Assembly (NCBI GenBank): GCA_048013815.1
Contig: CM106586.1
Span: forward strand, 13,702,001 to 13,766,000
DNA length: 64,000 nucleotides
From: Setoptus koraiensis
Lineage: Eukaryota; Animalia; Arthropoda
Direction: 5' to 3'
This document shows positions 1-34,202 of this stretch, piece by piece (position 1 is the stretch's first letter; each line of letters begins with the position of its first letter). Made by a program: the position numbers and the translations under genes. The notes beneath the pieces are model-generated. The model worked only from the letters and a program-made list of their open reading frames with translations, was not told where the DNA came from and did no database searches.

Positions 1-999
1 TCGATTCGATGTTAGTCGTTGTTCGATGACATAGAATAGCAAATCGAATTGTGCGCAGACAGACAAACAGTTAAAACATATGGAGCATTAGCTAGCGGAG
101 TGCGAATTGGCACAGATTCAACAAACACACACAGACAGACACGCACAGACAGGCGGAGAGTGTGCAAAACGCAATACTCCGCCATGTACAAATGGTGGTG
201 TGAGTGAGAACAGGGTCTGCATTACAGAGAGACAGGGTCCATCTTGTTTTTGTTTCACATCATCGTTATTATTTTACATTGGATTTTGCACCCTCGCTTT
301 GTGTCGCCATTTTCGATTCTATTTGTTCTATATTCTGCACACTGGATTACACACAAATGAGCCCACCAGAACGACCAACGGAATTCTAGATCATAGTTCG
401 AATTTGGTTCCAATATTCGCTAGGCCTGGATACATATTATCACATCGTCGCCACTAACTGGTAGTAGCTAATTCAGCATAGATTCAATTGGAACAACTAG
501 TATATATTACTAAATAATTACTACATTGATGCTAACTCTCATCGCGACCACAATATTTCAGAAATATCTCGGGATAAACCTCAATTTAGACCATTTTTAT
601 TATTCGATCAATTGATTGTCTATAACTGTTATTACATTCAGCTTGAGATCAATCTGAGTCACACCATCGATATTAACCCGAATCGCTGGATAATAGTAAT
701 AATATTGAATATCATCAATAAGCTAGCCCATAGGGATACAGAGCTACAGGCGGCGTCATTAAATTGACTCAACCACTTTACAATAATAAGGGAGGCGCTT
801 ATTATTGCAACACAATTACATAACAACAAACACAGTTGAACGTGCGCCTTTGCTGGCCCGGAGTGCTGGTGGATATTTCCAGTTATTGCTGACTGTATGT
901 ATTACACACTATAAACCAAGTCTGTCTTATTTGACTACGCACCCAGTTTCCTGCCGTGCCGATGCCGTTCGACTAGCTCGCTCAATACTCTCTGTCTAG

Positions 1000-1038
<39 letters not shown>

Positions 1039-2390
1039 CACACACACACACTTTTGGAACTATCGATGAGAACTTCATTATTAACAGAATCTAATTAGGC
1101 TGTAATAATTATAATAATTTCTGTTGCGCAACAACACGACTACAAGTATTCCCACAGGCAAATAAACTAAGGCATAGACTCATATTAGATAGCTGATCCA
1201 TTAAACTAACACCGTGTAATTCTTATCTCATCAAACAACTATCACCTATTAATCCATCCAGTCGTTCATTGATGAGGCACACTCAAGTATCTTCAATCAA
1301 GCCTGTTTTCTAACAACACGTTACAGGTAATGCTGTTGTAGTTCTACAATAGCTTTTCAATTTAAAAATCTTTTGGAGCCGAAACAGGGAACATCGTCTA
1401 GAACATTGGAGCAAATCGCCATCTTTTGGGATATCGTTACTCACTCAACATTAGGCATATGTCACGTTTATCACAAGCATGACGACGATGATATTTTAAG
1501 CTCGCTAATCTCCAAATAGAAGTTTTTTGTTGAAAATTCATAAGTGCAATCGTCACATTACATCAAATCTTCACAGTTAGTAAACAAATTGCTTTTCCAA
1601 GCCAGATACATAGATAGTCTGCGCCTCCATCTGGAACATGCAGTCAGCGCAGGCTCGACCACACTATTAGTCATACAACAGCTACACTGATTTTGTTGCA
1701 GCAGTCAGTCAGTCAATCAGACGACACGACACCAAAGCGGCTTGGGCAAACATTAAATCGGTATAAAAATGATTATCATCTTACTGCTGTTTAATTGTTT
1801 ATATTGATGATTATCATGATATCATCACTACTAGCTAGCTCCAACCAATGCTCAATTTACCACAATTCACTACTATCAACAACGACAATATTGGCCATAT
1901 TATTTTGGATGGTGAAAACATTGAACTATCACAAACTTGCAAGCTGTGATTGTTGTTAGTAGTTTGATGAACCACTACATCATCGATAATACAAGTAAGT
2001 TGATCAATTGAATATATCTCAACTCAATTTCTATCAGCAACATAGATAAATCTCAACTAGTATTCGATGTATCTTTCTCTTTCTTGCTAAAGCGTATGGT
2101 CTCCGAAGTGGCGTTAACTCGGACACTTCCTCTTTCAATCTTCAATTGCCAACTATATCATATAACCAATATGCTCATTCGAAGATGACATCTGAACAAA
2201 AACTATCAGAAACTTTCTTCCTCCAGTGAAGTGATCTATCCGACATATGGACAACAGATATCCATGCGTGATCATCACACAAGTGCATTAACAAATAACT
2301 AATCATTGTCTACAGACACATCCTTCTGCTAAAAGTTCGAATCAGAAAAACAAAAGAAGCACACACCCATGAAAGGATAATCTATTTCTT

Positions 2391-4228
2391 TTGTACTTTG
2401 ACTGGGATAGGCAACCAAATCTAGATACAGTGCAATCATTTTTTTCTCAAATTTTCAAAACGGCTGTACACGCTGATACTGACCAAGCCACTCGAGAAAC
2501 CTTGAGTGGTTCGATTGACGAAAGTGATTGGCATACCAAATGTGAAGAGTGTGATACAACTGTTATTGACGGTCCACTTACGAATATCAGTTCAATTTCA
2601 CATAAAACTATACCTTTCAAGATTGAGCATCAACTGAAGAAATGTAAACAAGTACAAAAAACAACTTTGTCTAATAACGGATCACAATCAAACCAAGATG
2701 TAGTATCTGAGGAAGGGACCAGCTCCGTCATTGACGGACCAATAAAATGTGGGTCCAACTGGGACAGTCCAGGAAAAAACAGCGACGAACGAATGATCAC
2801 ATCTAGATCAGAATTTGTGAGACAAGTTAACGACAGTTGCGATGCTCGTGATCAAAACAAAATAAGTGACAAAAGTGAATCTGAATTGTCTCACAAGCAC
2901 TTCAATTACCCTCCGAGTGATAACCAACCACCTTCAGTTAGTGATAATAAACTAGTTATGGGGCCCACTAAGTTTGAGCCAAATTTTACTGGTGATGACG
3001 GTTCATTGATATTTCAAAGCAATAAATCCAGAGTATCTGACTACTCTACCGCTCACAACGTTGTTAGTATGAAATGTGTATCGTCTTCAGCCCCTCAAGA
3101 TGTGCCTGTCGTCACAATAAATGATTTGAAAAAGAAGACTATTGATCCAAAAGACGCTAATCCATCAACTAATTGGATCACAGACCTACAAGATTTTAAC
3201 ATTAGATATGATTTCAGATGCCGCTCCATTCAGACCGACCATCTCAAGACATCTACCATAAAAGATGTACCTAGTCGTCGAGCATCATCTCTAACTTCAA
3301 ACGCGTCATCTCAACCATCTGCACCGTTACTGGGGAATCTTGAAGTAAGTCTTCATTTGTCTGAAGTTCAGACTCTGAACAGCTCTTCATCGATCTCGAA
3401 AGTTAGAGGTGTTTTCCGATCAACCACTGCCATGATACGTTCAATTTATTTAACTTGTCTACTCTTTTGAAATCACTTTACAACCAAATCCATATCATGA
3501 TTGTCATACTTAGGAAAATATTCTCAACCGGAGACTAGCACCCGTTCAAACTGTGGATGGATTTAGAGCTGAGATTAGAGCAAGTGGCTCATTTTGCCCT
3601 AGACCATTATCATCACCAGTGACTGTTTCATTCTATTGTATCGGGGACAGCTTTCCATATCTAGGTCAACTTCATTTAGGAGACAAAGGCTATCACATAC
3701 CACGCAAAGGTACACTCCAAGTCACATTGTTCAATCCATTAGGAACTGTGGTAAAGATGTTTATAGTCTTTTTCGATTTGTCGGATATGCCAGCAAATTC
3801 ACAAACCTTCCTCCGCCAGAGAACTCTCTATATGCCCAACTCATTGGGAATTCAAACTTCGATTAATAGTCATGATCCAGAGAATATTCGAAGAGTCAGA
3901 TACATAATACATTTAAGGTGGGTCCGACTCACCTTTATAGGTAGAGGTTCATCATAGTGACATATGTTTTAATGCAAACTAATGTGCCTGAACTAGCTCT
4001 CTAATGTTAACCTAAATACATGCTAATATTTATTTTTCATCGAAAACTTTTTCTCATAGATTTGTCAGCTCTAAATCTGGAAGGATTTATCTAAATGAAG
4101 ACGTGAGAATCTACATTTCTAGAAAGAGTGATCTCGACGCTGCCACAAGGATGATGACGGATCAAACCCATGAACTACGATCATTCGATGAATATCCTGA
4201 GAGTCCTAGATTTTCCACCAGATCATGA
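2391..4228 (+). CDS. Atos: Atos homolog (ATOSA/FAM214A, Drosophila Atossa family), copy 1. Exons about 2391-3344, 3514-3917, 4060-4228; 5' end unresolved
   Basis: Spliced product reads LLGNLE|ENILNRRLAPVQTVDGFRAEIRASGSFCP...GTLQVTLFNPLGTVVKMFIVFFDLSDMPANSQTFLRQRT...VRYIIHLR|FVSSKSGRIYLNEDVRIYISRKS...PESPRFSTRS*, matching the conserved FAM214 C-terminus. GT-AG introns at 3345-3513 and 3918-4059 keep the frame. An in-frame TGA at 2370 means the true start or upstream exons are uncertain. Confidence 0.9.
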
Positions 4229-4938
4229 CCTCCGCCGCTACTTTACAACAAACGATATCCAAAACAAAGCGGATGCTCTTACGTTATTATAGGTTTTTTT
4301 CAAATTGATTTCCAATCATATATATTGGAATAATAGAAATGATACTTCAAACCTACTGACGGAAGCACTGTACCGGCAATCGATTGTATCCCTCAGCTAG
4401 CCACAAAGTATACCTTTTCCATATTCAGAATGGTATTCATAGTGATTTTTACTTCGATATTGAAACGCCAAACGGTACTGTCACTCATAACAAACTGAGT
4501 TCGATACATAGTACAAGCTAGAAATTTCGCCGAAATGTTTCCATGAGAATATCTATGCAACTGTCAGTTCTATACTGGAAGACTAACCGAAAATTGTAAA
4601 TAGTTATCAACCGTTTAGTTCATTAATAATCCTACTATGTCTAGACTTACAAATATATAATCTAACAAGTGTATAGTATAACAGATATCGTGCACATTTT
4701 TAACGCCGATACAATATTACTACATAGAAAAAGAATGTTACTATTTGCATATATTGCAAATACAAAAAGAAATTATTAGCCATTGATTGTGTTCGAAAGA
4801 GATAAGTATCCTAGCTAGGATAAAGGGTGAGCGGCGTGAAAATGTGCCTGGTATCTGGATTTGAAAACCCCCTCAATAGGATGTCATTTTGAGAGTATAC
4901 CTGATTAGGTGGTACCCGGATATTTAGTTCTGTTTACA

Positions 4939-5850
4939 CTATAATTGTTCCAATATATTCTTGACTTCGCAATGCTTCTCTCTCAAGAATTGTAACTCGA
5001 TGTTGTAGAGTTGTTCTGCTTCTTTTATGTTAGTGCATGAGATGAATTCTTTTAGTCTTGATCTAGTCTCATCAATGAATGCCAGTAACTTTGAAGCCTC
5101 GTCTCGAGATTTAAAATCATTTTTCAGCAAAAAGTACTTGAAGGTTATGAGATCCATCGATTCTTTTACAACTTCGAACGATATGGGACCATAAATTCTG
5201 ATTAAATAGTCGATATGTTCATTCAAACAATCTAGCGCTAGTTGGAATTCTTTGGTCAACTTAAAATATTCATAAAGTCCTTTTCGGACCTCTACCATGA
5301 CAGGATTTTTCCAGTAGACTAAATCGGAAATCTTTTGTTTGCATTCCATCAGCTTCTTCGACTTTTGGGTGTTGCTTGACATGTGCTGGTTGGAAGTTTC
5401 GATTGAGAGCCATTTTCTCAATTCTCCTATTTGTTCCAGTCTAAGTTTGACATCGAGCTTGGTGGATTTACATTTCATGCAAGCAGAAGTATAGTCTCTA
5501 TTATATATAACAGGACCTTCGCATGAGGAACACTGCAAAGCCTTCGTTTCGTCCTCCTCGTTATTAGAGCAAGCATGACATGAGCAATCAAAATAATATT
5601 GACTTTTCAGTCTTGATTGGCGATCTTTTTTCGACATACTACGAACCGAAGGCCCGTAACAGTAACAGACTTCGTCTCCAGGTTGTATGCTCCCACCAGC
5701 TCGCACTATCATTTTGTTGTTTTGGAACATGGTCAATACATTCGGCCTACAGCTGTGATTGAGTAAACTAATCGTTGCATATATTGCAATTCCGATTGGT
5801 TTTTCGACCACATCTGAGGTTTCAGTTGATAATTCATGAAATTGTTGATC
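4939..5850 (-). CDS. Smyd4: Smyd4 3' part, copy 1 (partial; 5' portion lost at the gap)
   Basis: Open frame containing SLLNHSCRPNV, EVCYCYG and post-SET FDCSCHAC. Identical in protein to the copy 2 C-terminus except Y/H at RI(Y/H)GP. Confidence 0.88.
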   Translation of the reverse strand, partial: DQQFHELSTETSDVVEKPIGIAIYATISLLNHSCRPNVLTMFQNNKMIVRAGGSIQPGDEVCYCYGPSVRSMSKKDRQSRLKSQYYFDCSCHACSNNEEDETKALQCSSCEGPVIYNRDYTSACMKCKSTKLDVKLRLEQIGELRKWLSIETSNQHMSSNTQKSKKLMECKQKISDLVYWKNPVMVEVRKGLYEYFKLTKEFQLALDCLNEHIDYLIRIYGPISFEVVKESMDLITFKYFLLKNDFKSRDEASKLLAFIDETRSRLKEFISCTNIKEAEQLYNIELQFLREKHCEVKNILEQL

Positions 5851-6350
5851 NNNNNNNNNNNNNNNNNNNNNNNNNNNNNNNNNNNNNNNNNNNNNNNNNN
5901 NNNNNNNNNNNNNNNNNNNNNNNNNNNNNNNNNNNNNNNNNNNNNNNNNNNNNNNNNNNNNNNNNNNNNNNNNNNNNNNNNNNNNNNNNNNNNNNNNNNN
6001 NNNNNNNNNNNNNNNNNNNNNNNNNNNNNNNNNNNNNNNNNNNNNNNNNNNNNNNNNNNNNNNNNNNNNNNNNNNNNNNNNNNNNNNNNNNNNNNNNNNN
6101 NNNNNNNNNNNNNNNNNNNNNNNNNNNNNNNNNNNNNNNNNNNNNNNNNNNNNNNNNNNNNNNNNNNNNNNNNNNNNNNNNNNNNNNNNNNNNNNNNNNN
6201 NNNNNNNNNNNNNNNNNNNNNNNNNNNNNNNNNNNNNNNNNNNNNNNNNNNNNNNNNNNNNNNNNNNNNNNNNNNNNNNNNNNNNNNNNNNNNNNNNNNN
6301 NNNNNNNNNNNNNNNNNNNNNNNNNNNNNNNNNNNNNNNNNNNNNNNNNN
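5851..6350. other. Scaffold gap of exactly 500 N
   Basis: 500 N. The left contig ends in GATC and the right contig starts exactly on an LTR terminus (TGTAACG). Fixed 500-N spacers are typical of some Hi-C scaffolders (inference). Confidence 0.99.
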
Positions 6351-6564
6351 TGTAACGACCAAATCGTTCAGTCGGTACAAGATATACTAATATGACGCTG
6401 AGGGAGGTTTACTTTAGCTGTTAGATGTTTATTGTATGAGAGTTGAAGCACAAGTGAAGTGTTTGAGATGAATACACGCATATATAAGTGTTTACAAGTG
6501 AATATCATAAGTGAACCATGAGATGAATAGTACGTGTGTGGATAGTTACAACAGTGGCGTTACA
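6351..6564 (-). mobile_element. 214-bp LTR of a second, related LTR-retrotransposon family, in inverted orientation (solo LTR or 5' LTR of an element running into the gap)
   Basis: Termini TGTAACG...CGTTACA are the same 7-bp inverted ends as the neighbouring element. The minus strand reads TATATA followed by AATAAA, as in the neighbour's LTR. The interior is otherwise unrelated. Confidence 0.75.
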
Positions 6565-6568
6565 GCCA

Positions 6569-6837
6569 TGTAACGACCCGTTCCGTGCCGCTACTATTCA
6601 CGCACACTCCAACTGACACACCCACTGACACACCCCTTTCCCGACCACAAACACGCTACAGTTCATCATAACCCACTTCCTGTTCACACAATATATATTA
6701 CACACACAGTTACCAATAAAGATCACTCTTACGTTAGCCTTAAGACAATACACAACTCGCTATTTGCCTAATTATTTATATAAAGAACTCTCGCGTTCGT
6801 TGTCTAGATATCACCCGACATCAACCACAACGTTACA
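6569..6837 (+). repeat. 5' LTR
   Basis: TGTAACG...CGTTACA; TATATA then AATAAA inside; no difference from 13257-13525 seen. Confidence 0.97.
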
Positions 6838-6839
6838 TA

Positions 6840-6857
6840 TGGCATCCCATTTCGTGA
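6840..6857 (+). promoter_or_regulatory. Putative primer-binding site (cognate tRNA not identified)
   Basis: TGGCATCCCATTTCGTGA begins 2 nt after the LTR; TGG is complementary to tRNA CCA. Confidence 0.6.
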
Positions 6858-7131
6858 CTTACTGATAAAATTCTAAGAGTCCCAATTAAAACAAAAATTT
6901 GTTGCAATCAGTGTGTTGCAGACAAAGAGAAAAAACCGTTGGAAATTTGAGCACGCTGTTAGCGCACACACGTAAGGCAATCAGCCATTTTGGGATTGCG
7001 GTGTAGCAAGACAATTTCAACATTATTCATTTGTATCGGGAGGTAGAATTGTTATCCCTAAGTAGATAAATAACTAGGGTAGGAGTTAAGAAGTCGTTAA
7101 GCAGTATTAGTCAAGGAAAAATCAACTCAAG

Positions 7132-10100
7132 ATGAGTTCAGACGAAAATAATGATAAATCAGGAGTCCAGGACTCCATAAATGAAGAGAAAGTCGAGCAA
7201 ACGATTGCTGACAAACTCACTGAAACAGTTTTAGGAAAGTTAGGAGGATTGCTAAGAGAGCAATTCCAAACACTGAATCAAAGGATAGAAGCCATTGAGA
7301 AGAGCAATGCAAATGCTTCAACTCTAATAGATACGACGTATTATGATGCAGACCAAACTAGGAAAGCACAGAATAGAACGTCGACAACAAAGAAATCGGG
7401 ATCGGATCCCAAACAACCTGAAAGATTAAACGAGTGTGATGAGTCAGACTCATCGTCAATTATTAGTAATGTATCACAAGATGTGAGACCAACATTCATT
7501 ATAGCGAATACCACTGTAATACCTTTACCAGACTTCAGCGGAGAAAGACAAGACGCAAGAAAGTGGCTGAGAGGATATGAGCAAGCTTGCCAAATGAACA
7601 ATTACAGTGATCATCAGAAAATCCAATATGTAGGTTCGTGTATGAAGACCCCTAAAGCACATGCTTATTGGGTAACCGAAGTAGAAGATACCGGCATTGA
7701 TTGGACAAGATTTAAACAGACATTCCTAGAGGATCATACAGACAATAATATAAAGATAGAGCAACTTACAAAACTGTGTAATGCTAGACAGTATAGTGAA
7801 GAGACACCGATTGAATTCTACACAAGAGTGAGAAAACTTTGTAAAGATTATGACAGATACTTGCCAGATGATCGTGTCATTGAATACATCATGAAAGGAT
7901 TGAAAATACAATATGCTAATTATGTTAGAGAAAGTACAGGATCTCTAAGTAAGCTTAAAGATAGTCTCAAATCGATAAGAACTTTGAAAAATAGAGAGAG
8001 ACCTGATGATAAAACAAACAAAAGCCCCAGAAAGGAAGCTAGAGAGCAACTCAAAAAGGATGAGTGTGCTAAGTGCCACAAAACTGGTCATTGGGCAAAA
8101 GAATGTCCAGAGAATAAGAAACCAAACGATCAACCTGATAACAAAAGCACTGCCAAGGATAAAATGAAACTGAAAGTGAACCAGGTTCATACAAATGATG
8201 AAAGTGAATCAGATAAAGAATCTTCAACTGAAGAAGATACAAAATCAGTTAACAGTGAAACAGAATGTAACACCGAGACGGTCTCGGACGATTCCGAAAA
8301 TAACATAAACATGATTCAAAATAACGAACAAATCGCTATATCCAAACTCAATAATATGAGTAAATATCTAAGACAATTTGGAGAGATCAAAGTCGATGTC
8401 AAGATAAACAACATTAAAGAATGTTTACAGTTAGACTCAGGCGCAGGTATGACTGTGATCAATAAAACAAAAGCCATTAACACAAAACTCACAATATTAG
8501 ATTGGGATCACAAGCCATTCAGAGCTTTCAACAATGGAACAGTTACACCATTAGGATATTCAAGTGCTGTATTTGAATATGATGGACAGAGAAACTGTCT
8601 TATAGTAGCCATAGTAGGAGATGAATTCGATTCACTTCTAGGCAGAGATTTCATTCGAGTGTTTAACATTCCGATTGGTAGAAACGGCAAGATCTCACCA
8701 GGTGAGGATGACATAGCCATACTTAAACAAGACTTCTCAGGAAGCGAAACTGACGAAGATGAAGAAGTTAAAATTTCAGTGAAGACTGAGATACTTCTAG
8801 AACCTTTTGAGATGAAAGCAGTAGAAGTTGAGAGATCAGACGACTCGTTATGTAAAATTGAAATGAATGGTCTCCAAACTAACGAAATCAAAGGACTTTT
8901 TGTCAGCCCAGGTACAACAGAAAAAGAGAAAACATTTCGAATATTTATTCAGAACAGATCGGAACAACCGAACATACTATTTGTAAAACAAGTTATGGCA
9001 ACTGGAAGACATATTAATCCTGAACCATACAAACCCGACGACTCCGACATTATAATCAACAGTTTATCTACAATTCTTGCAACGTCTACACAACATAAAG
9101 ATAGAAAATCTATACTAGAACCAATGCTCAAAATGGATGATAGGTTATCCGTCGACCAGGTCGACGAAATGAAGAAAGGAATACTCCTATACTCAGATGT
9201 GTTCTCTATCAGTCCGACTGATTTAGGTCACGTGAAGATAACGAAACATAAGATTGAGACAGGTGACTCAAGACCAATTGCATTGAAGCCATACCGTATG
9301 GCCCATAAAGAGAAAGAAATCTTCAGAACAATGTTAGACGACATGCTGAATGCAAAAGTGGTTAGACCATCAAAAAGCCCGTGGGCATTTCCGGTCGTCC
9401 TTGTGGACAAACCAGATGGATCTAAACGATGTTGCATCGATTACCGCAAACTTAATGCAATCACAGTCCCCGACAGGTATCCGATACCTCACTGTGACGA
9501 AGCTTTAGAACTAATGTCTGGAATGAATTATTTCAGCAAGCTAGATATCACATCTATGTATTGGCAGATAGCAATGGACGAGAACGACATAGAGAAGACC
9601 TCGTTCACAACACCATTTGGATGCTACGAGTTTGTAGTAATGCCGTTTGGCTTAATGAATGCCCCAGCTACTGCAGTACGCCTCATGAATACAGTTCTCA
9701 ATGGAATGAATGGAGAATATGTCTTCGTTTATTTCGATGACATTTTGATATTTAGTGAAACATTTGAAGAACACCTAATTCACGTACAACATGTTCTTAT
9801 GGCATTAAGAGAATACAACATAAAACTAAAACCAACCAAATGTTCATTCGGATTAGCAAGCACTTCCTTCTTAGGTAACCATATATCCTCGGTTGGAATC
9901 AAACCAGATCCAGAGAGATCATCAGATGTAGAGAAATTCGAACAACCTAAAAATGTTACGCAGGTTAAGAGTTTCTTAGGCCTATGTAATTACTATAGAA
10001 GATTTGTGAAGAACTTCGCTATGATTGCAAAACCGATGAACGATCTCACAAAAAAGAATATCAAGTTCCAATGGGATTTGAGCTGCCAGGCAGCCTTCGA

Positions 10101-11970
10101 TAAGCTCAAGAACATACTAATTAACCCACCGATATTAGTCCACTACGACTACAATGCAGAACATGAGCTGAGAACAGACGCTTGTCATTACGGAATAGGA
10201 GCAGTTCTTATTCAAATCTCAGACAAACAAAACAAATCTGGAGTGATAGCTTATGTCAGTCGAATTTTGAAGAACGCCGAACTAAACTACGGTATTAGCG
10301 AGAAAGAATGCCTAGCTGTCATTTACGCTACATCTAAACTGAGACATTATTTGTATGGAAAACATTTCACAATTGTCACTGACCATTGCAGCCTATGTGT
10401 TCTCAAGAATATTGGCAATCCAACTGGACGATTGGCAAGATGGAGTTTGAAAATGCAACAGATGGAATATTCAGTTAAATACAAATCAGGAAAACTTCAT
10501 CACGATGCTGACTGTATGTCTAGATTTGCAACAGAAACTCATGATGAGCCAGGCTCACCATCAGATGAAGCGGATGACATACCGACGCTGACTATCAATT
10601 GGCTAGAGAACGAATCAAACATTGATATCCGAGAAGAACAAAGAACAGATGACTTTGCCAAAAGATACATAGATATCTTAGAGAGTGATTCTACTAGAAG
10701 ACAGAAGAACAGACTAGCTAGAAATTACCTGATACTCGATGGCATACTGCATAAGCGTATATCGAGAAAACAGACCAATAGTTATGTCATCGTTGTCCCT
10801 CAGAAATTGGTTGACCTCATCCTAAGAGAGATGCATGATAGAATATCAGCAGGTCATTTCGGTATTAGAAGAACATACAAAGCAATAGCATCAAAGTATT
10901 GGTGGAACGATATGTACAAGAACATCAAAGACTACGTATCCAACTGCGATGCTTGCCAGCGACGTAAAGCGACTAATCAACCGAGAAACGGATATGACCA
11001 ACCAATTAAGATATCTGACCGTCCTTTCGAACAGATTGGTGTAGACCTATTAGGCCCAATAAATCCACCAACAGATAGAGGAAACACTCATATCATTGTC
11101 ATGACAGACCATTATTCTAAGTTTGTAATTGCTGAACCATTAGATGATACGTCATCTGAGACGATCAATGATACCATACAGAGAAGACTCTTTAACATCT
11201 TCGGTACTCCTAGAGTTATCATTACCGACAGAGGCCCAAATTTGGTTTCATGGGAAAGCAAACAATTCTTCAGTATGTTCAAAGTGGAACGAGTAACCAC
11301 AACTGCATACAATCCAGAAGCAAACGGACAAACTGAAAGGTACAATCGCGTTCTTTGTGACCAACTCACTATCTATACAGGTGACAATAAGAAAGACTGG
11401 GATCTGCACGTCTTGGACCTGGTCCATGCTTACAACATCTCGTATCACGAAGTCACTAAGAAATCCCCATACGAAGTTGTTTTTGGTCAACAAGCTAGAA
11501 CTGCCTTAGATAATCTCATGTTCAAGGATATCTACACAGATGATATCAATACCTATACACACAGATTTGAAAATATGCAGAAAAACATCAAAGACTTCAT
11601 ATACAAAAATCAATACAGAAACAAACAACGTCTTGACTCGAAAAGAACTCATTTCAAGTATCAAGTAGGTGATATTGTTCTACTCCAAAGAGGTGCTGAG
11701 CATGGTAAACTGTCGAACCGCCGCACTGGACCTTACAAAATCATTAAGGCGATAGGAGAGCTCGAGTTGGATTACGAAATTCAACACGTAAACAATATTA
11801 ACGACGTACAAATCGTTCACGTTAAAAGATTATCACCTTACAGAGCAAGAGACGTCTCCAACATACAGTTAGAACACAATTACGGCAACCAGGTTGCCCA
11901 AACAGCTGACGAACCAACAAATAATACTCACAGCAGAGACACGCAAACCACGTGTGCTACACAACAATAA
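7132..11970 (+). CDS. Gag-Pol polyprotein, single 1612-aa ORF
   Basis: Capsid-like LPDFSGE...AHAYW; CCHC knuckle CAKCHKTGHWAKEC; protease LDSGA; RT PWAFPVVLV, IDYRKLN, MPFGLMNAP, YFDD; RNase H TDAC, SEKECLA, TDH, ADCMSR; integrase HHCC, VDLLGP, TDRG, NGQTER; C-terminal GPY motif. Confidence 0.98.
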   Translation: MSSDENNDKSGVQDSINEEKVEQTIADKLTETVLGKLGGLLREQFQTLNQRIEAIEKSNANASTLIDTTYYDADQTRKAQNRTSTTKKSGSDPKQPERLNECDESDSSSIISNVSQDVRPTFIIANTTVIPLPDFSGERQDARKWLRGYEQACQMNNYSDHQKIQYVGSCMKTPKAHAYWVTEVEDTGIDWTRFKQTFLEDHTDNNIKIEQLTKLCNARQYSEETPIEFYTRVRKLCKDYDRYLPDDRVIEYIMKGLKIQYANYVRESTGSLSKLKDSLKSIRTLKNRERPDDKTNKSPRKEAREQLKKDECAKCHKTGHWAKECPENKKPNDQPDNKSTAKDKMKLKVNQVHTNDESESDKESSTEEDTKSVNSETECNTETVSDDSENNINMIQNNEQIAISKLNNMSKYLRQFGEIKVDVKINNIKECLQLDSGAGMTVINKTKAINTKLTILDWDHKPFRAFNNGTVTPLGYSSAVFEYDGQRNCLIVAIVGDEFDSLLGRDFIRVFNIPIGRNGKISPGEDDIAILKQDFSGSETDEDEEVKISVKTEILLEPFEMKAVEVERSDDSLCKIEMNGLQTNEIKGLFVSPGTTEKEKTFRIFIQNRSEQPNILFVKQVMATGRHINPEPYKPDDSDIIINSLSTILATSTQHKDRKSILEPMLKMDDRLSVDQVDEMKKGILLYSDVFSISPTDLGHVKITKHKIETGDSRPIALKPYRMAHKEKEIFRTMLDDMLNAKVVRPSKSPWAFPVVLVDKPDGSKRCCIDYRKLNAITVPDRYPIPHCDEALELMSGMNYFSKLDITSMYWQIAMDENDIEKTSFTTPFGCYEFVVMPFGLMNAPATAVRLMNTVLNGMNGEYVFVYFDDILIFSETFEEHLIHVQHVLMALREYNIKLKPTKCSFGLASTSFLGNHISSVGIKPDPERSSDVEKFEQPKNVTQVKSFLGLCNYYRRFVKNFAMIAKPMNDLTKKNIKFQWDLSCQAAFDKLKNILINPPILVHYDYNAEHELRTDACHYGIGAVLIQISDKQNKSGVIAYVSRILKNAELNYGISEKECLAVIYATSKLRHYLYGKHFTIVTDHCSLCVLKNIGNPTGRLARWSLKMQQMEYSVKYKSGKLHHDADCMSRFATETHDEPGSPSDEADDIPTLTINWLENESNIDIREEQRTDDFAKRYIDILESDSTRRQKNRLARNYLILDGILHKRISRKQTNSYVIVVPQKLVDLILREMHDRISAGHFGIRRTYKAIASKYWWNDMYKNIKDYVSNCDACQRRKATNQPRNGYDQPIKISDRPFEQIGVDLLGPINPPTDRGNTHIIVMTDHYSKFVIAEPLDDTSSETINDTIQRRLFNIFGTPRVIITDRGPNLVSWESKQFFSMFKVERVTTTAYNPEANGQTERYNRVLCDQLTIYTGDNKKDWDLHVLDLVHAYNISYHEVTKKSPYEVVFGQQARTALDNLMFKDIYTDDINTYTHRFENMQKNIKDFIYKNQYRNKQRLDSKRTHFKYQVGDIVLLQRGAEHGKLSNRRTGPYKIIKAIGELELDYEIQHVNNINDVQIVHVKRLSPYRARDVSNIQLEHNYGNQVAQTADEPTNNTHSRDTQTTCATQQ

Positions 11971-12214
11971 ACAAATACCAACAGCAACATATAATAACAA
12001 TATTCAACAGGCAACGTACAATTCCATTCATCAAACAACCACATTTAATTAAAGATAACATTTCAGAAAACAGAAAATAAATAGGAACCAGGTTCCACAG
12101 GACAGTTAACAAAACCATTATTATAACCAACAACTAACAGGAATAACAGGAATATAATAATCAACACAAACAGGCTAAAAATATATTAATAGGAACCAGG
12201 TTCCCAACAGCATC

Positions 12215-13171
12215 ATGACACAACAATCTGAACACACAATAGAATTCATAGAAGGAACGAAAGAAACTCACCCTGAGTGGTTCGGAGACCTGATAACAGG
12301 AGGAAAAGGATTCCAACTTGGTTACAAATCGGACGAATTTATCAACGAATCACTTGCAGAAAGATATGCTTGTCGCATTTGTTCAGACGTTGAACCAAAT
12401 TCATTTAGACATATTGCAACACCTGGTGTTTATCTAAAAGAAAATGGAGCAAGAATGAGTGCCTGCGAAGCAATTTATTGTCGAAACTGCACCCACAACA
12501 TCTTGTACACTAATGCAGTGGACGATAGTGGAAATCGTGTACCAACATTTGAGTTACAACCGGTGAACTGCCCACTTAGATGCGGAATACCGTTTAGTTA
12601 TTCAACATTGACGTACCTCAATAAACAGGACAGACAACTCATCTTCGATGACCTAACAATGCGATGTGAAAAATGTAATGGTATACACACTAACAGACAA
12701 ATGTACAATTGTGATTGCCCGGCAATCAGAGGCCACTCAAGTCAAAGCCAACAAAAAGAAGAGTCATCACCATCTGAGCTAGATATTCTCTGTGCTGACA
12801 GATTGAAAGGACTTCATCTAGGGCGATCCAATAATCGACGAGCAACACCACGTCCATCTAATGCTAATTTAGACAGCAGATCACGATCGTTTATCATACG
12901 AAGAGGTACCGAAGATAAACTGACCATTGACAGCCACATGGACGAACCAATTGTTGACCTTAAAAAGAGAGTAGCAGAAGGCCTAAACATGGAAGCTTCG
13001 AAATTCAAGCTTATCCTGTTCCAACACGTCGATCTAGATAAATTAGATACAGTTAAACAACTGAACACCGGACCAAGAAACGTTTGGCTGACTATGCTGC
13101 CGAAGAAATTATGGCCAGCTGATGGACAAACACTGGATCTTGCAGTTCGTAATATCGGTCCAACCATATGA
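12215..13171 (+). CDS. Retrotransposon accessory ORF (318 aa): RING-like finger, second Cys finger and C-terminal ubiquitin-like domain; not an envelope
   Basis: C53xxC56...C84xAxYC89xxC92...C119PxxC123 with a TRAF-like GY-x4-F lead-in. Second finger C151xxC154...C166xC168. Residues about 225-295 follow the ubiquitin beta-grasp pattern by eye. No signal peptide or transmembrane segment. Lies inside the LTRs, before the PPT. Confidence 0.85.
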   Translation: MTQQSEHTIEFIEGTKETHPEWFGDLITGGKGFQLGYKSDEFINESLAERYACRICSDVEPNSFRHIATPGVYLKENGARMSACEAIYCRNCTHNILYTNAVDDSGNRVPTFELQPVNCPLRCGIPFSYSTLTYLNKQDRQLIFDDLTMRCEKCNGIHTNRQMYNCDCPAIRGHSSQSQQKEESSPSELDILCADRLKGLHLGRSNNRRATPRPSNANLDSRSRSFIIRRGTEDKLTIDSHMDEPIVDLKKRVAEGLNMEASKFKLILFQHVDLDKLDTVKQLNTGPRNVWLTMLPKKLWPADGQTLDLAVRNIGPTI

Positions 13172-13247
13172 ATGAGGAGCCAGGCTCCTTCGAACAACCA
13201 GTCGCACCAAAATCTTAACTCTTTCGTCTGGTATCCGAAAATAAACT

Positions 13248-13256
13248 GGGGGGAGA
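13248..13256 (+). promoter_or_regulatory. Polypurine tract
   Basis: GGGGGGAGA immediately 5' of the 3' LTR. Confidence 0.85.
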
Positions 13257-13525
13257 TGTAACGACCCGTTCCGTGCCGCTACTATTCACGCACACTCCAA
13301 CTGACACACCCACTGACACACCCCTTTCCCGACCACAAACACGCTACAGTTCATCATAACCCACTTCCTGTTCACACAATATATATTACACACACAGTTA
13401 CCAATAAAGATCACTCTTACGTTAGCCTTAAGACAATACACAACTCGCTATTTGCCTAATTATTTATATAAAGAACTCTCGCGTTCGTTGTCTAGATATC
13501 ACCCGACATCAACCACAACGTTACA
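13257..13525 (+). repeat. 3' LTR
   Basis: Direct repeat of 6569-6837. Confidence 0.97.
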
Positions 13526-14331
13526 AACCTCACAATAAACACAGTTGTGGGGCGTGTGAGCGTGTCCAGTAAAACGCCCTCTATCAACTGGTACCTGAGT
13601 TACTCATATGGCGAAGCTCTTAGGGTGTTCTTTTAAAAATAAAATCGCGCAGTTGGCTTTTAAGCTTTGAGCCGCAGTTAGCATTCGCCATTTCCCAGCC
13701 GCACCGCGAACTTGTCCATTTAAAAGTTGATTCGATCGCAATTATTTTCCCAGTACAGTAATGTGTGTGCAACAGTTTACTATAAGAAAAAGTTAGATAA
13801 CGAGTTTTCGAGCCTGCTATCTCAATACTGTATGATTATGGTGGCATTTCTGGTGTTACATGGTAACAACAACATGTAACAAGCCCGAGACTGAGAGACG
13901 CACAGCCGAATGCTCCATGCTGACGCAATTTGTTATCCATGTGCGTTTGTTGTTCAATGGCGTGAGCACATGCAATAAGAACGGTTCCATGCCTTTTCGT
14001 CGATAGATGTCTTGATCGAGTTTTTCTATCTCCTCTTTCTCTTTAGTCACACTGAAGGGGAGGGAGTGAGAGGCCGCATAGTGAAGCTGGGAGGCTACGC
14101 CCCTCAGTGCAATAAAATGACGACTAAGTGGTGGGTAGACTAGCAAGGACGATAAATCGCCCAGCTCAAGGTTGTGAGTGGGCACACTAAAGCGAGAGAG
14201 GGAGCGGAATTTAGTTGCATGGGCACAAGGGTGATGTGAGGTGCAAGTAAAGGGAGTTTTCCGAGTGTCTGGCCGTGTCGACGAAAAGAGAGAGAGAGAG
14301 AGAGAGAGAGAGCCCTACACCAATGAAAACA

Positions 14332-15334
14332 TCGATTCGATGTTAGTCGTTGTTCGATGACATAGAATAGCAAATCGAATTGTGCGCAGACAGACAAACA
14401 GTTAAAACATATGGAGCATTAGCTAGCGGAGTGCGAATTGGCACAGATTCAACAAACACACACAGACAGACACGCACAGACAGGCGGAGAGTGTGCAAAA
14501 CGCAATACTCCGCCATGTACAAATGGTGGTGTGAGTGAGAACAGGGTCTGCATTACAGAGAGACAGGGTCCATCTTGTTTTTGTTTCACATCATCGTTAT
14601 TATTTTACATTGGATTTTGCACCCTCGCTTTGTGTCGCCATTTTCGATTCTATTTGTTCTATATTCTGCACACTGGATTACACACAAATGAGCCCACCAG
14701 AACGACCAACGGAATTCTAGATCATAGTTCGAATTTGGTTCCAATATTCGCTAGGCCTGGATACATATTATCACATCGTCGCCACTAACTGGTAGTAGCT
14801 AATTCAGCATAGATTCAATTGGAACACCTAGTATATATTACTAAATAATTACTACATTGATGCTAACTCTCATCGCGACCACAATATTTCAGAAATATCT
14901 CGGGATAAGCCTCAATTTAGACCATTTTTATTATTCGATCAATTGATTGTCTATAACTGTTATTACATTCAGCTTGAGATCAATCTGAGTCACACCATCG
15001 ATATTAACCCGAATCGCTGGATAATAGTAATAATATTGAATATCATCAATAAGCTAGCCCATAGGGATACAGAGCTACAGGCGGCGTCATTAAATTGACT
15101 CAACCACTTTACAATAATAAGGGAGGCGCTTATTATTGCAACACAATTACATAACAACAAACACAGTTGAACGTGCGCCTTTGCTGGCCCGGAGTGCTGG
15201 TGGATATTTCCAGTTATTGCTGACTGTATGTATTACACACTATAAACCAAGTCTGTCTTATTTGACTACGCACCCAGTTTCCTGCCGTGCCGATGCCGTT
15301 CGACTAGCTCGCTCAATACTCTCTGTCTAGTATT

Positions 15335-15365
<31 letters not shown>

Positions 15366-18300
15366 CACACACACACACACACTTTTGGAACTATCGATGA
15401 GAACTTCATTATTAACAGAATCTAATTAGGCTGTAATAATTATAATAATTTATGTTGCGCAACAACACGACTACAAGTATTCCCACAGGCAAATAAACTA
15501 AGGCATAGACTCATATTAGATAGCTGATCCATTAAACTAACACCGTGTAATTCTTATCTCATCAAACAACTATCACCTATTAATCCATCCAGTCGTTCAT
15601 TGATGAGGCACACTCAAGTATCTTCAATCAAGCCTGTTTTCTAACAACACGTTACAGGTAATGCTGTTGTAGTTCTACAATAGCTTTTCAATTTAAAAAT
15701 CTTTTGGAGCCGAAACAGGGAACATCGTCTAGAACATTGGAGCAAATCGCCATCTTTTGGGATATCGTTACTCACTCAACATTAGGCATATGTCACGTTT
15801 ATCACAAGCATGACGACGATGATATTTTAAGCTCGCTAATCTCCAAATAGAAGTTTTTTGTTGAAAATTCATAAGTGCAATCGTCACATTACATCAAATC
15901 TTCACAGTTAGTAAACAAATTGCTTTTCCAAGCCAGATACATAGATAGTCTGCGCCTCCATCTGGAACATGCAGTCAGCGCAGGCTCGACCACACTATTA
16001 GTCATACAACAGCTACACTGATTTTGTTGCAGCAGTCAGTCAGTCAATCAGACGACACGACACCAAAGCGGCTTGGGCAAACATTAAATCGGTATAAAAA
16101 TGATTATCATCTTACTGCTGTTTAATTGTTTATATTGATGATTATCATGATATCATCACTACTAGCTAGCTCCAACCAATGCTCAATTTACCACAATTCA
16201 CTACTATCAACAACGACAATATTGGCCATATTATTTTGGATGGTGAAAACATTGAACTATCACAAACTTGCAAGCTGTGATTGTTGTTAGTAGTTTGATG
16301 AACCACTACATCATCGATAATACAAGTAAGTTGATCAATTGAATATATCTCAACTCAATTTCTATCAGCAACATAGATAAATCTCAACTAGTATTCGATG
16401 TATCTTTCTCTTTCTTGCTAAAGCGTATGGTCTCCGAAGTGGCGTTAACTCGGACACTTCCTCTTTCAATCTTCAATTGCCAACTATATCATATAACCAA
16501 TATGCTCATTCGAAGATGACATCTGAACAAAAACTATCAGAAACTTTCTTCCTCCAGTGAAGTGATCTATCCGACATATGGACAACAGATATCCATGCGT
16601 GATCATCACACAAGTGCATTAACAAATAACTAATCATTGTCTACAGACACATCCTTCTGCTAAAAGTTCGAATCAGAAAAACAAAAGAAGCACACACCCA
16701 TGAAAGGATAATCTATTTCTTTTGTACTTTGACTGGGATAGGCAACCAAATCTAGATACAGTGCAATCATTTTTTTCTCAAATTTTCAAAACGGCTGTAC
16801 ACGCTGATACTGACCAAGCCACTCGAGAAACCTTGAGTGGTTCGATTGACGAAAGTGATTGGCATACCAAATGTGAAGAGTGTGATACAACTGTTATTGA
16901 CGGTCCACTTACGAATATCAGTTCAATTTCACATAAAACTATACCTTTCAAGATTGAGCATCAACTGAAGAAATGTAAACAAGTACAAAAAACAACTTTG
17001 TCTAATAACGGATCACAATCAAACCAAGATGTAGTATCTGAGGAAGGGACCAGCTCCGTCATTGACGGACCAATAAAATGTGGGTCCAACTGGGACAGTC
17101 CAGGAAAAAACAGCGACGAACGAATGATCACATCTAGATCAGAATTTGTGAGACAAGTTAACGACAGTTGCGATGCTCGTGATCAAAACAAAATAAGTGA
17201 CAAAAGTGAATCTGAATTGTCTCACAAGCACTTCAATTACCCTCCGAGTGATAACCAACCACCTTCAGTTAGTGATAATAAACTAGTTATGGGGCCCACT
17301 AAGTTTGAGCCAAATTTTACTGGTGATGACGGTTCATTGATATTTCAAAGCAATAAATCCAGAGTATCTGACTACTCTACCGCTCACAACGTTGTTAGTA
17401 TGAAATGTGTATCGTCTTCAGCCCCTCAAGATGTGCCTGTCGTCACAATAAATGATTTGAAAAAGAAGACTATTGATCCAAAAGACGCTAATCCATCAAC
17501 TAATTGGATCACAGACCTACAAGATTTTAACATTAGATATGATTTCAGATGCCGCTCCATTCAGACCGACCATCTCAAGACATCTACCATAAAAGATGTA
17601 CCTAGTCGTCGAGCATCATCTCTAACTTCAAACGCGTCATCTCAACCATCTGCACCGTTACTGGGGAATCTTGAAGTAAGTCTTCATTTGTCTGAAGTTC
17701 AGACTCTGAACAGCTCTTCATCGATCTCGAAAGTTAGAGGTGTTTTCCGATCAACCACTGCCATGATACGTTCAATTTATTTAACTTGTCTACTCTTTTG
17801 AAATCACTTTACAACCAAATCCATATCATGATTGTCATACTTAGGAAAATATTCTCAACCGGAGACTAGCACCCGTTCAAACTGTGGATGGATTTAGAGC
17901 TGAGATTAGAGCAAGTGGCTCATTTTGCCCTAGACCATTATCATCACCAGTGACTGTTTCATTCTATTGTATCGGGGACAGCTTTCCATATCTAGGTCAA
18001 CTTCATTTAGGAGACAAAGGCTATCACATACCACGCAAAGGTACACTCCAAGTCACGTTGTTCAATCCATTAGGAACTGTGGTAAAGATGTTTATAGTCT
18101 TTTTCGATTTGTCGGATATGCCAGCAAATTCACAAACCTTCCTCCGCCAGAGAACTCTCTATATGCCCAACTCATTGGGAATTCAAACTTCGATTAATAG
18201 TCATGATCCAGAGAATATTCGAAGAGTCAGATACATAATACATTTAAGGTGGGTCCGACTCACCTTTATAGGTAGAGGTTCATCATAGTGACATATGTTT

Positions 18301-34161: not shown

Positions 34162-34202
<41 letters not shown>

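What the first reader, a model, noticed from the sequence alone, without database searches (positions are those of the whole stretch)
7162..13189. At least 19 sequence-diverse perfect palindromes, all centred on C-N-G, written through the coding sequence of a Gypsy element
Seen directly (arm-spacer-arm): 7162 GGAGTCC-A-GGACTCC; 7398 GGGATC-G-GATCCC; 7438 GATGAGTC-A-GACTCATC; 8177 TGAACC-A-GGTTCA; 8273 CCGAGAC-G-GTCTCGG; 8694 CTCACC-A-GGTGAG; 9150 CGTCGACC-A-GGTCGACG; 9208 ATCAGTC-C-GACTGAT; 9288 GCCATAC-C-GTATGGC; 9475 AGGTATC-C-GATACCT; 10082 GCTGCC-A-GGCAGC; 10545 TGAGCC-A-GGCTCA; 11414 TGGACC-T-GGTCCA; 11884 GGCAACC-A-GGTTGCC; 12084 and 12192 GGAACC-A-GGTTCC; 12418 AACACC-T-GGTGTT; 12712 TGATTGCC-C-GGCAATCA; 13175 AGGAGCC-A-GGCTCCT. 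Twelve of the 13 CCWGG sites in the element are embedded this way (exception 8908). Six CCWGG sites checked in the host Atos/Smyd4 region are not. I saw none in the LTRs, and no palindrome in the element with arms of 6 bp or more, a 1-nt spacer and a different inner pair. A uniform-base estimate gives about 1.6 such palindromes of any centre in 6.4 kb and about 0.4 with a C..G centre. Sixteen lie in intact ORFs (14 gag-pol, 2 ORF2). The arms differ while the symmetry is kept, which points to a shape (5-7 bp stem with a CNG triloop, or a dyad DNA site) rather than a fixed sequence. Hypotheses (inference): dispersed Gag/nucleocapsid packaging hairpins, as in the multiple packaging signals of MS2 and STNV; dispersed docking sites for an element-encoded protein such as ORF2, analogous to VANC motifs in Arabidopsis VANDAL elements; or RT template-switch perfection of quasi-palindromes. 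I know no description of this pattern in LTR retrotransposons.
Basis: partly seen in the sequence, partly recalled or inferred. Interest (0 to 1): 0.9.

Follow-up and report, generated by a model that had tools for sequence, protein, structure and literature searches.

The report
Nineteen perfect palindromes in a retrotransposon
An intact gypsy-type jumping gene in an arthropod genome carries 19 short, perfectly mirror-symmetric sites, all built round the same C-any-G centre, about 75 times more than chance allows, and nothing described so far explains them.

Summary
Between 7162 and 13189 there are 19 perfect palindromes (arms 6-8 nt, 1-nt spacer), all with a C-N-G centre. About 0.25 are expected from base composition (Poisson P about 2e-29). 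Synonymous-codon shuffles of gag-pol give 0.66 against 14 observed.

The set is sharply bounded. There are no arms of 5, no one-mismatch class and no complementarity beyond the arms. No other centre type occurs in the element, and host DNA shows nothing comparable.

The sites need particular synonymous codons and spare conserved residues. They avoid Pfam-matched domain cores (1 of 14). Places where the protein would allow such a palindrome but none exists do not avoid them (11 of 23, Fisher p = 0.013). This looks like a history of selection on the protein, not naive editing.

Mirrored deviations between arms point to base pairing or copying, not to a protein reading two half-sites. My best reading (confidence 0.3) is dispersed single-strand hairpins with a 5-7 bp stem and a CNG triloop, made by short template switches and kept as cis signals. 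Neutral template-switch footprints and a record artefact remain live rivals.

No close relatives were available. Conservation is therefore untested.

The parts
6569..6837 (+). 5' LTR (269 bp, TG...CA ends with a 7-nt terminal inverted repeat)
   Evidence: 100% identical to the 3' LTR; ends read; holds no palindrome of this class
6840..6857 (+). candidate primer-binding site starting TGG, 2 nt after the LTR
   Evidence: read directly; inferred, no tRNA match tested
7132..11970 (+). gag-pol ORF, 1612 aa, intact (gag, zinc knuckle, protease, RT, RNase H, integrase)
   Evidence: no stops or frameshifts
12215..13171 (+). ORF2, 318 aa, intact orphan protein with a Cys-rich N-terminal half
   Evidence: one relative only (54% identity)
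13248..13256 (+). purine tract next to the 3' LTR (polypurine tract)
   Evidence: read
13257..13525 (+). 3' LTR
7162..7176 (.). palindrome 1: arm 7, centre A, gag-pol aa 11-15
   Evidence: hairpin in local MFE, -7.0 kcal/mol
7398..7410 (.). palindrome 2: arm 6, centre G, core TC-N-GA, aa 89-93
7438..7454 (.). palindrome 3: arm 8, centre A, core TC-N-GA, aa 103-108
8177..8189 (.). palindrome 4: arm 6, centre A, aa 349-353; weakest stems, not in local MFE
8273..8287 (.). palindrome 5: arm 7, centre G, core AC-N-GT, aa 381-386
   Evidence: outcompeted in local MFE
8694..8706 (.). palindrome 6: arm 6, centre A, aa 521-525, just past the protease match
9150..9166 (.). palindrome 7: arm 8, centre A, aa 673-679; most stable hairpin (-8.6)
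9208..9222 (.). palindrome 8: arm 7, centre C, core TC-N-GA, aa 693-697
9288..9302 (.). palindrome 9: arm 7, centre C, core AC-N-GT, aa 719-724; only site with centre at codon position 1
   Evidence: three conserved residues kept inside it
9475..9489 (.). palindrome 10: arm 7, centre C, aa 782-786; the only one inside a Pfam-matched core (RT)
   Evidence: conserved Y, P, P kept; P(palindrome given peptide) 0.0004
10082..10094 (.). palindrome 11: arm 6, centre A, aa 984-988, between RT and RNase H
10545..10557 (.). palindrome 12: arm 6, centre A, aa 1138-1142, RNase H-integrase linker
11414..11426 (.). palindrome 13: arm 6, centre T, aa 1428-1432, after the integrase core
11884..11898 (.). palindrome 14: arm 7, centre A, aa 1585-1589, C-terminal tail
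12084..12096 (.). palindrome 15: arm 6, centre A, non-coding spacer between the ORFs
   Evidence: same 13-mer as palindrome 16
12192..12204 (.). palindrome 16: identical copy, ends 10 nt before the ORF2 start codon
12418..12430 (.). palindrome 17: arm 6, centre T, ORF2 aa 68-72
   Evidence: peptide not kept in the one relative
12712..12728 (.). palindrome 18: arm 8, centre C (CC-C-GG), ORF2 aa 166-172
13175..13189 (.). palindrome 19: arm 7, centre A, non-coding, starts 4 nt after the ORF2 stop
8556..8580 (+). possible extra member: plus-strand quasi-palindrome on a C-N-G centre, arm 12 with two G.U pairs
   Evidence: post hoc, uncertain
10193..10213 (+). possible extra member: plus-strand quasi-palindrome on a C-N-G centre, arm 10 with two G.U pairs
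   Evidence: post hoc, uncertain

Best explanation
The 19 sites are a real, element-intrinsic set of strictly Watson-Crick self-complementary sequences. In the single-stranded forms of the element they fold into short hairpins: a 5-7 bp stem and a C-N-G triloop, usually closed by C-G with purines on the 5' side of the upper stem. Because no G.U pairs are used, this holds for both plus-strand RNA and minus-strand cDNA. I infer that each arose in one step, by a short template switch that copied one arm from the other. Those that damaged the protein were purged. The survivors are kept as dispersed cis-acting signals read by shape plus loop, most plausibly by the element's own Gag zinc-knuckle or chaperone region during RNA selection or pairing of two genomic RNAs. 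Shown: the sites, their statistics, their sharp edges, their dependence on codon choice, their avoidance of conserved protein cores and their predicted folding. Inferred: the template-switch origin, the selection that keeps them, and the reader protein.
For: There are 19 sites against 0.25 expected, and 14 against 0.66 under synonymous-codon shuffles. Each site needs particular synonymous codons: P(palindrome given peptide) is 0.0004-0.10. Arm deviations from the weak RRCC-N-GGYY preference are mirrored exactly, as expected for pairing or copying. The palindromes are 60% GC in a 39% GC, A-rich element. In 15 of 19 sites the hairpin is in the local MFE, and in 14 the mean pair probability is >= 0.86. 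Realised sites avoid Pfam-matched cores (1 of 14, binomial P = 0.0125), whereas unrealised peptide-compatible C-N-G centres do not (11 of 23; Fisher p = 0.013). Conserved columns inside the sites are kept as often as outside (6 of 7 against 82%). Non-coding interior carries them at a similar density (3 in about 0.6 kb). Two further long plus-strand quasi-palindromes with G.U pairs share the C-N-G centre, and the minus strand has none of comparable length. Template switching can make perfect stems in one event and keep them perfect (PMC8794818).
Against: This is a single copy, and no family member or close relative was compared. Distant relatives cannot encode the sites at the same places. RNA elements under selection normally show G.U pairs, mismatches and variable stems; here there is no imperfect class at all. 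The stems are short and weak, -1.5 to -8.6 kcal/mol, and four are outcompeted locally. Nothing explains why the centre is C-N-G and never G-N-C. No site lies in the 5' leader, where retroelement packaging and dimer signals usually sit. Rfam has no match. No binding protein is identified.
Confidence: 0.3

Rival explanations
1. Neutral mutational footprints. The element's reverse transcription, or a single error-prone cycle, made many short template switches that copied one arm from the other. The palindromes have no function and persist only where the protein tolerates them.
For: The complementarity is perfect Watson-Crick with sharp ends and random flanks (26% complementary beyond the arms). 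There are no G.U pairs. The feature is element-specific and absent from host DNA. Sites avoid conserved cores, as expected after purifying selection. The mechanism is documented for DNA replication (PMC8794818).
Against: Template switching has no known reason to turn round only at C-N-G (19 against 0 for other centres). Neutral palindromes should decay, yet there are 19 perfect and none with one internal mismatch. All events would therefore have to be very recent, which fits poorly with a selection filter having had time to act. Arms stop at 8.
Confidence: 0.2
2. The record is not natural at these bases. It could be an assembly or polishing artefact, or an edited or synthetic sequence.
For: The pattern is unusually clean: arms of only 6-8, no imperfect members and one centre type. 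The element lies next to a 500-N gap and inside a 14.3-kb duplicated, probably mis-scaffolded stretch. No target-site duplication is visible. Neither the gag-pol nor any close relative is in a 5.8-billion-protein collection.
Against: No known sequencing or polishing error produces length-neutral 13-17 nt palindromes. Both ORFs stay open, and conserved residues inside the sites are kept. The sites avoid domain cores while equally codable places do not. Arm composition fits neither native left arms nor uniform random arms. The host gene also lacks close kin (85% best hit), so the missing relatives reflect a poorly sampled lineage.
Confidence: 0.15
3. Intermolecular pairing sites. Each palindrome is self-complementary, so two copies of the genomic RNA could pair at many points: 12-16 bp with one central N.N mismatch flanked by G-C pairs. 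This would be a genome-wide version of retroviral dimer-linkage palindromes.
For: Computed homodimer energies are -16 to -30 kcal/mol, against -1.5 to -8.6 for the hairpins. The fixed C and G next to the unpaired centre would stabilise a central mismatch. It is my own knowledge that palindromes that switch between hairpin and duplex are used for dimerisation by retroviruses.
Against: Even-length palindromes would pair better, yet none with arm >= 6 exists in the element. There are no sites in the 5' leader. G.U pairs would be tolerated but are not used. The topology of many antiparallel contacts along two parallel RNAs is awkward.
Confidence: 0.1
4. Double-stranded DNA dyad sites bound by a dimeric protein (ORF2 or a host factor) on the integrated or unintegrated DNA.
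For: Odd-length dyad symmetry with a preferred core (RRCC-N-GGYY) resembles sites of homodimeric DNA binders. Strict Watson-Crick symmetry is a DNA-level property. Two identical copies lie just upstream of ORF2.
Against: A protein reads each half-site against a consensus and does not need the two halves to deviate identically. Here the deviations are always mirrored. ORF2 shows no DNA-binding family match. Most sites lie inside coding sequence, far from the LTR promoter.
Confidence: 0.07
5. Binding sites for a host hairpin-reading RNA-binding protein, in the manner of Smaug recognition elements or Roquin decay elements. These would tie the element's RNA to maternal mRNA control or decay.
For: These systems read a loop motif on a stem of arbitrary sequence. 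Smaug elements are common inside ORFs (PMC4053848). Thirteen sites contain CNGG.
Against: The defining Smaug loop is CNGG at the 5' end of a 4-8 nt loop, but here the second G is paired and the loop is 3 nt. Six sites lack CNGG. The Roquin triloop is pyrimidine-purine-pyrimidine (own knowledge), whereas here the last loop base is always G.
Confidence: 0.05

Closest known systems
Dispersed packaging-signal stem-loops of ssRNA viruses
   Same: Many short hairpins are spread through coding sequence. Their stems differ and they share a loop feature, so they are written over the protein code through codon choice.
   Different: Those signals are degenerate and imperfect, with G.U pairs and variable stems. 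Here the stems are perfect Watson-Crick with a fixed C..G pair next to a free centre. The host here is an LTR retrotransposon, for which no such system is described to my knowledge or in the two searches.
Template-switch (quasi-palindrome) mutations that create or perfect hairpins (PMC8794818; also PMC13100816)
   Same: They produce perfect reverse-complement arms in one event, with sharp ends, and can keep stems perfect without G.U intermediates.
   Different: They have no known centre specificity or fixed 1-nt spacer. They are described for replicative DNA polymerases, not as 19 events confined to one retroelement.
Retroviral and retrotransposon dimer-linkage palindromes (HIV-1 DIS, MoMLV PAL, Ty1 PAL; own knowledge)
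   Same: They are self-complementary sequences in a retroelement RNA that can form either a hairpin or an intermolecular duplex.
   Different: Those are one to three even-length palindromes in the 5' leader. Here there are 19 odd-length ones, none of them in the leader.
Smaug recognition elements (PMC4053848)
   Same: A non-specific stem carries a C-N-G-containing loop. They are frequent within ORFs and occur in arthropods.
   Different: The loop must be CNGG(N0-4) and 4-8 nt long. The palindromic fold here gives a 3-nt loop with the fourth base paired.
CCWGG sites (Dcm / EcoRII type)
   Same: Twelve sites have a CCWGG core.
   Different: That is a bacterial system. Seven sites have other cores, and nothing in it requires symmetric flanks. 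The likeness is sequence coincidence only.

Membership tests
Ty3/gypsy LTR retrotransposon (Metaviridae-like) | Two direct LTRs with TG...CA ends | tested here: met
   The LTRs are 269 bp and 100% identical, with a 7-nt terminal inverted repeat.
Ty3/gypsy LTR retrotransposon (Metaviridae-like) | Domain order gag - protease - RT - RNase H - integrase | tested here: met
   Pfam matches lie in that order in one 1612-aa ORF.
Ty3/gypsy LTR retrotransposon (Metaviridae-like) | Target-site duplication flanking the LTRs | tested here: not met
   The flanking 4-5 nt differ. The 5' flank is another LTR-like fragment next to an assembly gap, so this says little.
Dispersed packaging-signal hairpins | Multiple predicted stem-loops with a shared loop feature across the genome | tested here: met
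   There are 19 sites, and in 15 the hairpin is in the local MFE, all with a C-N-G loop.
Dispersed packaging-signal hairpins | Kept among strains or family members, with covariation | not tested
   No close kin were found at protein level. Fetching related element DNA was left out. Distant kin cannot encode the sites at the same places.
Dispersed packaging-signal hairpins | Bound by the capsid or Gag protein | not testable with these tools
   This needs binding or crosslinking data.
Template-switch mutation footprints | One arm is an exact reverse-complement copy of the other | tested here: met
   The arms are perfect, and complementarity falls to the background 26% right beyond them.
Template-switch mutation footprints | A multi-base change relative to the ancestral state, explained by one event | not testable with these tools
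   No close relative or outgroup copy is at hand.
Retroviral dimer-linkage palindromes | Located in the 5' leader near the packaging region | tested here: not met
   There is none in 6838-7131.
Smaug recognition element | CNGG at the 5' end of a 4-8 nt loop, with the base before it paired | tested here: not met
   The predicted loops are 3 nt and the fourth base is paired. The definition is from PMC4053848. Six sites lack CNGG.
Any Rfam RNA family | Covariance-model match | tested here: not met
   The only hit is a chance-level miRNA match, E = 0.72.

The most novel reading that the evidence does not exclude
An LTR retrotransposon maintains, at about 3 per kb through its coding and spacer sequence, strictly Watson-Crick hairpin or self-pairing sites with an invariant C-N-G centre. 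This would be a genome-wide structural code written over the protein code. It would be created and kept perfect by the element's own template switching and read during selection or pairing of its genomic RNA.
Probability: 0.25. Interest if true: 0.85.

Novelty: new variant of a known kind. Interest (0 to 1): 0.72.

Why it matters
If the sites are real and shared by the family, they would be the first dispersed, shape-defined nucleic-acid signal reported in an LTR retrotransposon. They would also show unusually plainly a second code laid over a protein code: 38% of the places in gag-pol where the protein permits such a palindrome actually have one. The all-or-none perfection would make them a natural test case for whether template switching builds and maintains hairpins. 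If they are footprints of an error-prone reverse transcription, they would define a new, centre-specific mutational signature. If they are an artefact, that would flag a problem in the assembly.

Tried and rejected
Chance is rejected.

A by-product of the protein sequence is rejected. Synonymous shuffles destroy the sites, and other centre types have 68 peptide-compatible places in gag-pol with none realised.

A host-genome property is rejected. The host ORF realises 0 of 15 compatible C-N-G centres, and none of the 54 host CCNGG sites is extended.

Conversion of pre-existing CCNGG sites alone does not fit. Only about 5 are expected in the interior, against 14 present.

The claim that the peptides were bent to fit is only weakly supported. 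There are 37 compatible centres, against 23 expected from homologue-derived controls but 31 expected from the host-ORF rate.

The CC-N-GG bias in coding sequence is largely what coding allows: 16 of 37 compatible centres and 8 of 14 realised ones.

Naive overwriting of one arm is unlikely, because conserved residues lie in both arms.

The ORF2 fold failed: the AlphaFold model has mean pLDDT 31, so no fold search was run.

Literature searches for perfect palindromes or CCWGG in LTR retrotransposons found nothing relevant.

No other copy or fragment of the element is in the window.

Limitation: all three word-indexed protein searches went on full-length queries (gag-pol, ORF2, host ORF). Short fragments of close kin, below 0.55 of the query length, were therefore never looked for, and the domains were not searched apart.
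Full report
**Observation**

A scan of the whole window for perfect inverted repeats with a 1-nt spacer and arms of at least 6 nt finds 82 sites. Only 8 of the 63 sites elsewhere in the window have that centre.

Arm counts for C..G centres in the element interior (6838-13255) are:

| Arm length | 3 | 4 | 5 | 6 | 7 | 8 |
|---|---|---|---|---|---|---|
| Sites | 9 | 6 | 0 | 9 | 7 | 3 |

- The three other possible inner pairs have no site with arm 6 or more.
- Spacers of 0, 2, 4 and 5 show nothing unusual. The spacer-3 excess is the same 19 sites seen one pair shorter.
- The LTRs have none.

**Anatomy and context**

- The element has 269-bp LTRs at 6569-6837 and 13257-13525. They are 100% identical, with TG...CA ends and a 7-nt terminal inverted repeat.
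- A TGG-initiated candidate primer-binding site lies 2 nt after the 5' LTR, and a purine tract lies before the 3' LTR.
- The gag-pol ORF is intact, 1612 aa, with gag, zinc knuckle, protease, RT, RNase H and integrase matches in that order.
- ORF2 is intact, 318 aa, with no family match. No gene of the element is broken.
- No target-site duplication is visible. The 5' flank (6351-6564) is itself LTR-like, with the same terminal 10-mer, and it follows a 500-N gap.
- Window 1-5850 is repeated almost exactly at 14332-20181. The element therefore sits in a stretch that is probably mis-scaffolded.
- The host ORF at 19270-21636 (minus strand) is a SET/MYND protein. Its best relative is 85% identical and unnamed, and named insect proteins are only 26-29% identical. 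The host is an arthropod of a poorly sampled lineage.

**Statistics**

- Base composition predicts 1.66 such palindromes of any centre and 0.25 with a C..G centre in the interior. Poisson P for 19 or more is about 2e-29.
- A thousand synonymous-codon shuffles of gag-pol, which keep protein and codon usage, give means of 1.62 in total and 0.66 C..G-centred, with maxima of 6 and 4. Observed are 14 and 14. ORF2 has 2 against 0.14.
- Given the encoded peptide and the element's codon usage, each site has a probability of only 0.0004-0.10 of being a palindrome.

**Character of the symmetry**

- Edges are sharp. Beyond the first mismatch the flanks are 26% complementary, which is background.
- There is no imperfect class. 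Every C..G centre with 7 or 8 of its first 8 pairs complementary is one of the 19. The nine centres with 6 of 8 are near background.
- All pairs are Watson-Crick.
- Allowing G.U adds three plus-strand sites on C-N-G centres. Two of them are long (arm 12 at 8556-8580, arm 10 at 10193-10213). The minus strand has none of comparable length. This was a post hoc look and is only suggestive.
- The centre base follows composition (A 11, C 4, G 2, T 2).
- The arms are not free of preference. Distance 2 from the centre is C in 13 of 19 and never G. Distance 3 is a purine in 17 of 19. Distance 4 is a purine in 14.
- One 13-mer occurs twice, at 12084 and 12192, with the same four bases before it, just upstream of the ORF2 start.
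- Wherever an arm departs from this weak preference, the other arm departs in mirror image. That is the signature of base pairing or of copying, not of a protein reading two half-sites.

**Relation to the protein code**

Counts of centres in gag-pol where the peptide would allow a palindrome of at least 13 nt:

| Sequence and centre type | Compatible centres | Realised |
|---|---|---|
| gag-pol, C-N-G | 37 | 14 |
| gag-pol, the other three centre types | 68 | 0 |
| Host SET/MYND ORF, C-N-G | 15 | 0 |

Broken down by core in gag-pol:

| Core | Compatible centres | Realised |
|---|---|---|
| CC-N-GG | 16 | 8 |
| TC-N-GA | 7 | 4 |
| AC-N-GT | 10 | 2 |
| GC-N-GC | 4 | 0 |

- Much of the CC bias in coding sequence is therefore what coding permits. 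All three non-coding sites are also CC-A-GG.
- Only 1 of 14 realised sites lies in a Pfam-matched stretch, although these stretches cover 38% of the ORF (binomial P = 0.0125).
- Of the 23 unrealised compatible centres, 11 lie in such stretches (Fisher p = 0.013).
- Against 120 distant homologues, columns conserved at 60% or more keep the common residue in 6 of 7 cases inside the sites and in 82% of cases outside. Conserved residues occur in both arms of sites 9288 and 9475.
- The sites thus look as if they had passed through selection on the protein. This argues against a naive edit of the record and against purely synonymous recoding.

**Relatives**

- The nearest gag-pol proteins are 27-44% identical.
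- ORF2 has one relative, at 54% identity, among 1.84 billion representatives.
- At the homologous places, the homologues' peptides could encode a C-N-G palindrome with arm 6 in 0-4% of cases, against 0.5% at random places.
- The two ORF2 sites fall on peptides that differ in the one relative in ways that exclude the palindrome (my reading).
- The sites are therefore not conserved by position across distant kin. Whether close kin or other copies share them is unknown.

**Folding**

- As RNA, each site folds as a 5-7 bp stem with a 3-nt loop, at -1.5 to -8.6 kcal/mol.
- Within 75 nt of context on each side, 15 of 19 hairpins are in the MFE. Four are outcompeted.
- Two copies of a site could pair with each other at -16 to -30 kcal/mol.
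- Rfam has no match.

**Explanation**

My best reading, at confidence 0.3, has three parts:
1. The sites are single-strand hairpins, or self-pairing sites, that are intrinsic to the element.
2. Each was made in one step by a short template switch. This mechanism is shown elsewhere to create perfect stems and keep them perfect (PMC8794818).
3. They are retained as dispersed cis signals where the protein allows.

The rivals are:
- **Neutral template-switch footprints (0.2).** These explain the perfection. They do not explain the single centre type or the lack of decay.
- **A record that is not natural at these bases (0.15).** The pattern is very clean and the neighbourhood is badly assembled, but the protein-aware placement argues against this.
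- **Intermolecular pairing of two genomic RNAs (0.1).**
- **Double-stranded dyad sites for a dimeric protein (0.07).** Mirrored deviations argue against this, and ORF2 gives no support.
- **Host hairpin readers of the Smaug or Roquin kind (0.05).** The defining loop features are not met.

**Comparison with the known**

The closest concept is the dispersed packaging-signal hairpins of small RNA viruses. The closest mechanism is template-switch mutation. The closest retroelement feature is the dimer-linkage palindrome. None shares the combination seen here: odd length, an invariant C..G pair next to a free centre, strict Watson-Crick arms of 6-8 nt, about 3 sites per kb, and confinement to the interior of one LTR retrotransposon. 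Two full-text searches found no description of such a pattern.

- All three word-indexed protein searches went on full-length queries. Short fragments of close kin were not sought, and the domains were not searched apart.
- The ORF2 model was too poor (pLDDT 31) for a fold search.
- Shuffled sequences were used only for counts inside scripts and were neither saved nor printed.

Noticed in passing
window 1-5850 and 14332-20181; N run 5851-6350: A 5.85-kb block is repeated almost exactly at an offset of 14331. The first copy ends at a 500-N gap and cuts the SET/MYND ORF short. This looks like a haplotype duplication or scaffolding error around a heterozygous insertion rather than a true tandem duplication.
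   Followed up: partly
window 6351-6564: An LTR-like fragment lies right after the gap and 4 nt before the element's 5' LTR. It starts with the same 10-mer as the LTR and ends with the same 7-mer. It is otherwise only weakly similar, slightly better in reverse orientation. No target-site duplication of the element is visible.
   Followed up: partly
window 12215-13171: ORF2 is an orphan. It has one relative (54% identity, 313 aa) among 1.84 billion representatives. Its N-terminal half is Cys-rich with only weak zinc-finger-like hints, and the C-terminal 100 residues are highly conserved. The structure model was unusable (pLDDT 31).
   Followed up: partly
window 12080-12096 and 12188-12204: A 17-nt direct repeat, made of four bases plus the identical 13-nt palindrome, occurs 108 nt apart in the spacer before ORF2. 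The second copy ends 10 nt before the start codon. It may be a signal for ORF2 expression.
   Followed up: no
window 8556-8580 and 10193-10213 (also 7220-7234): These are plus-strand quasi-palindromes on C-N-G centres that pair fully only if G.U is allowed (arms 12, 10 and 7). They may be further members readable only as RNA, or chance.
   Followed up: partly
window 20200-64000: Host DNA is poor in CCNGG (54 against 131 expected from composition), CTNAG and AGNCT. It is rich in GCNGC (362) and CGNCG (291).
   Followed up: no
window 19270-21636 (minus strand): This is an intronless 788-aa SET/MYND/TPR (Smyd4-like) ORF. Its best relative is 85% identical and unnamed, followed by a group at 36-40%. 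Named insect proteins are only 26-29% identical, so the host lineage is poorly sampled.
   Followed up: partly
window 2391-3470 and 16722-17801: A 359-aa ORF with a TTG start and no Pfam match lies inside the duplicated block. Its nature is unknown.
   Followed up: no
window 14287-14313, 27038-27064 and 34163-34199: The same short simple repeat occurs at three places.
   Followed up: no
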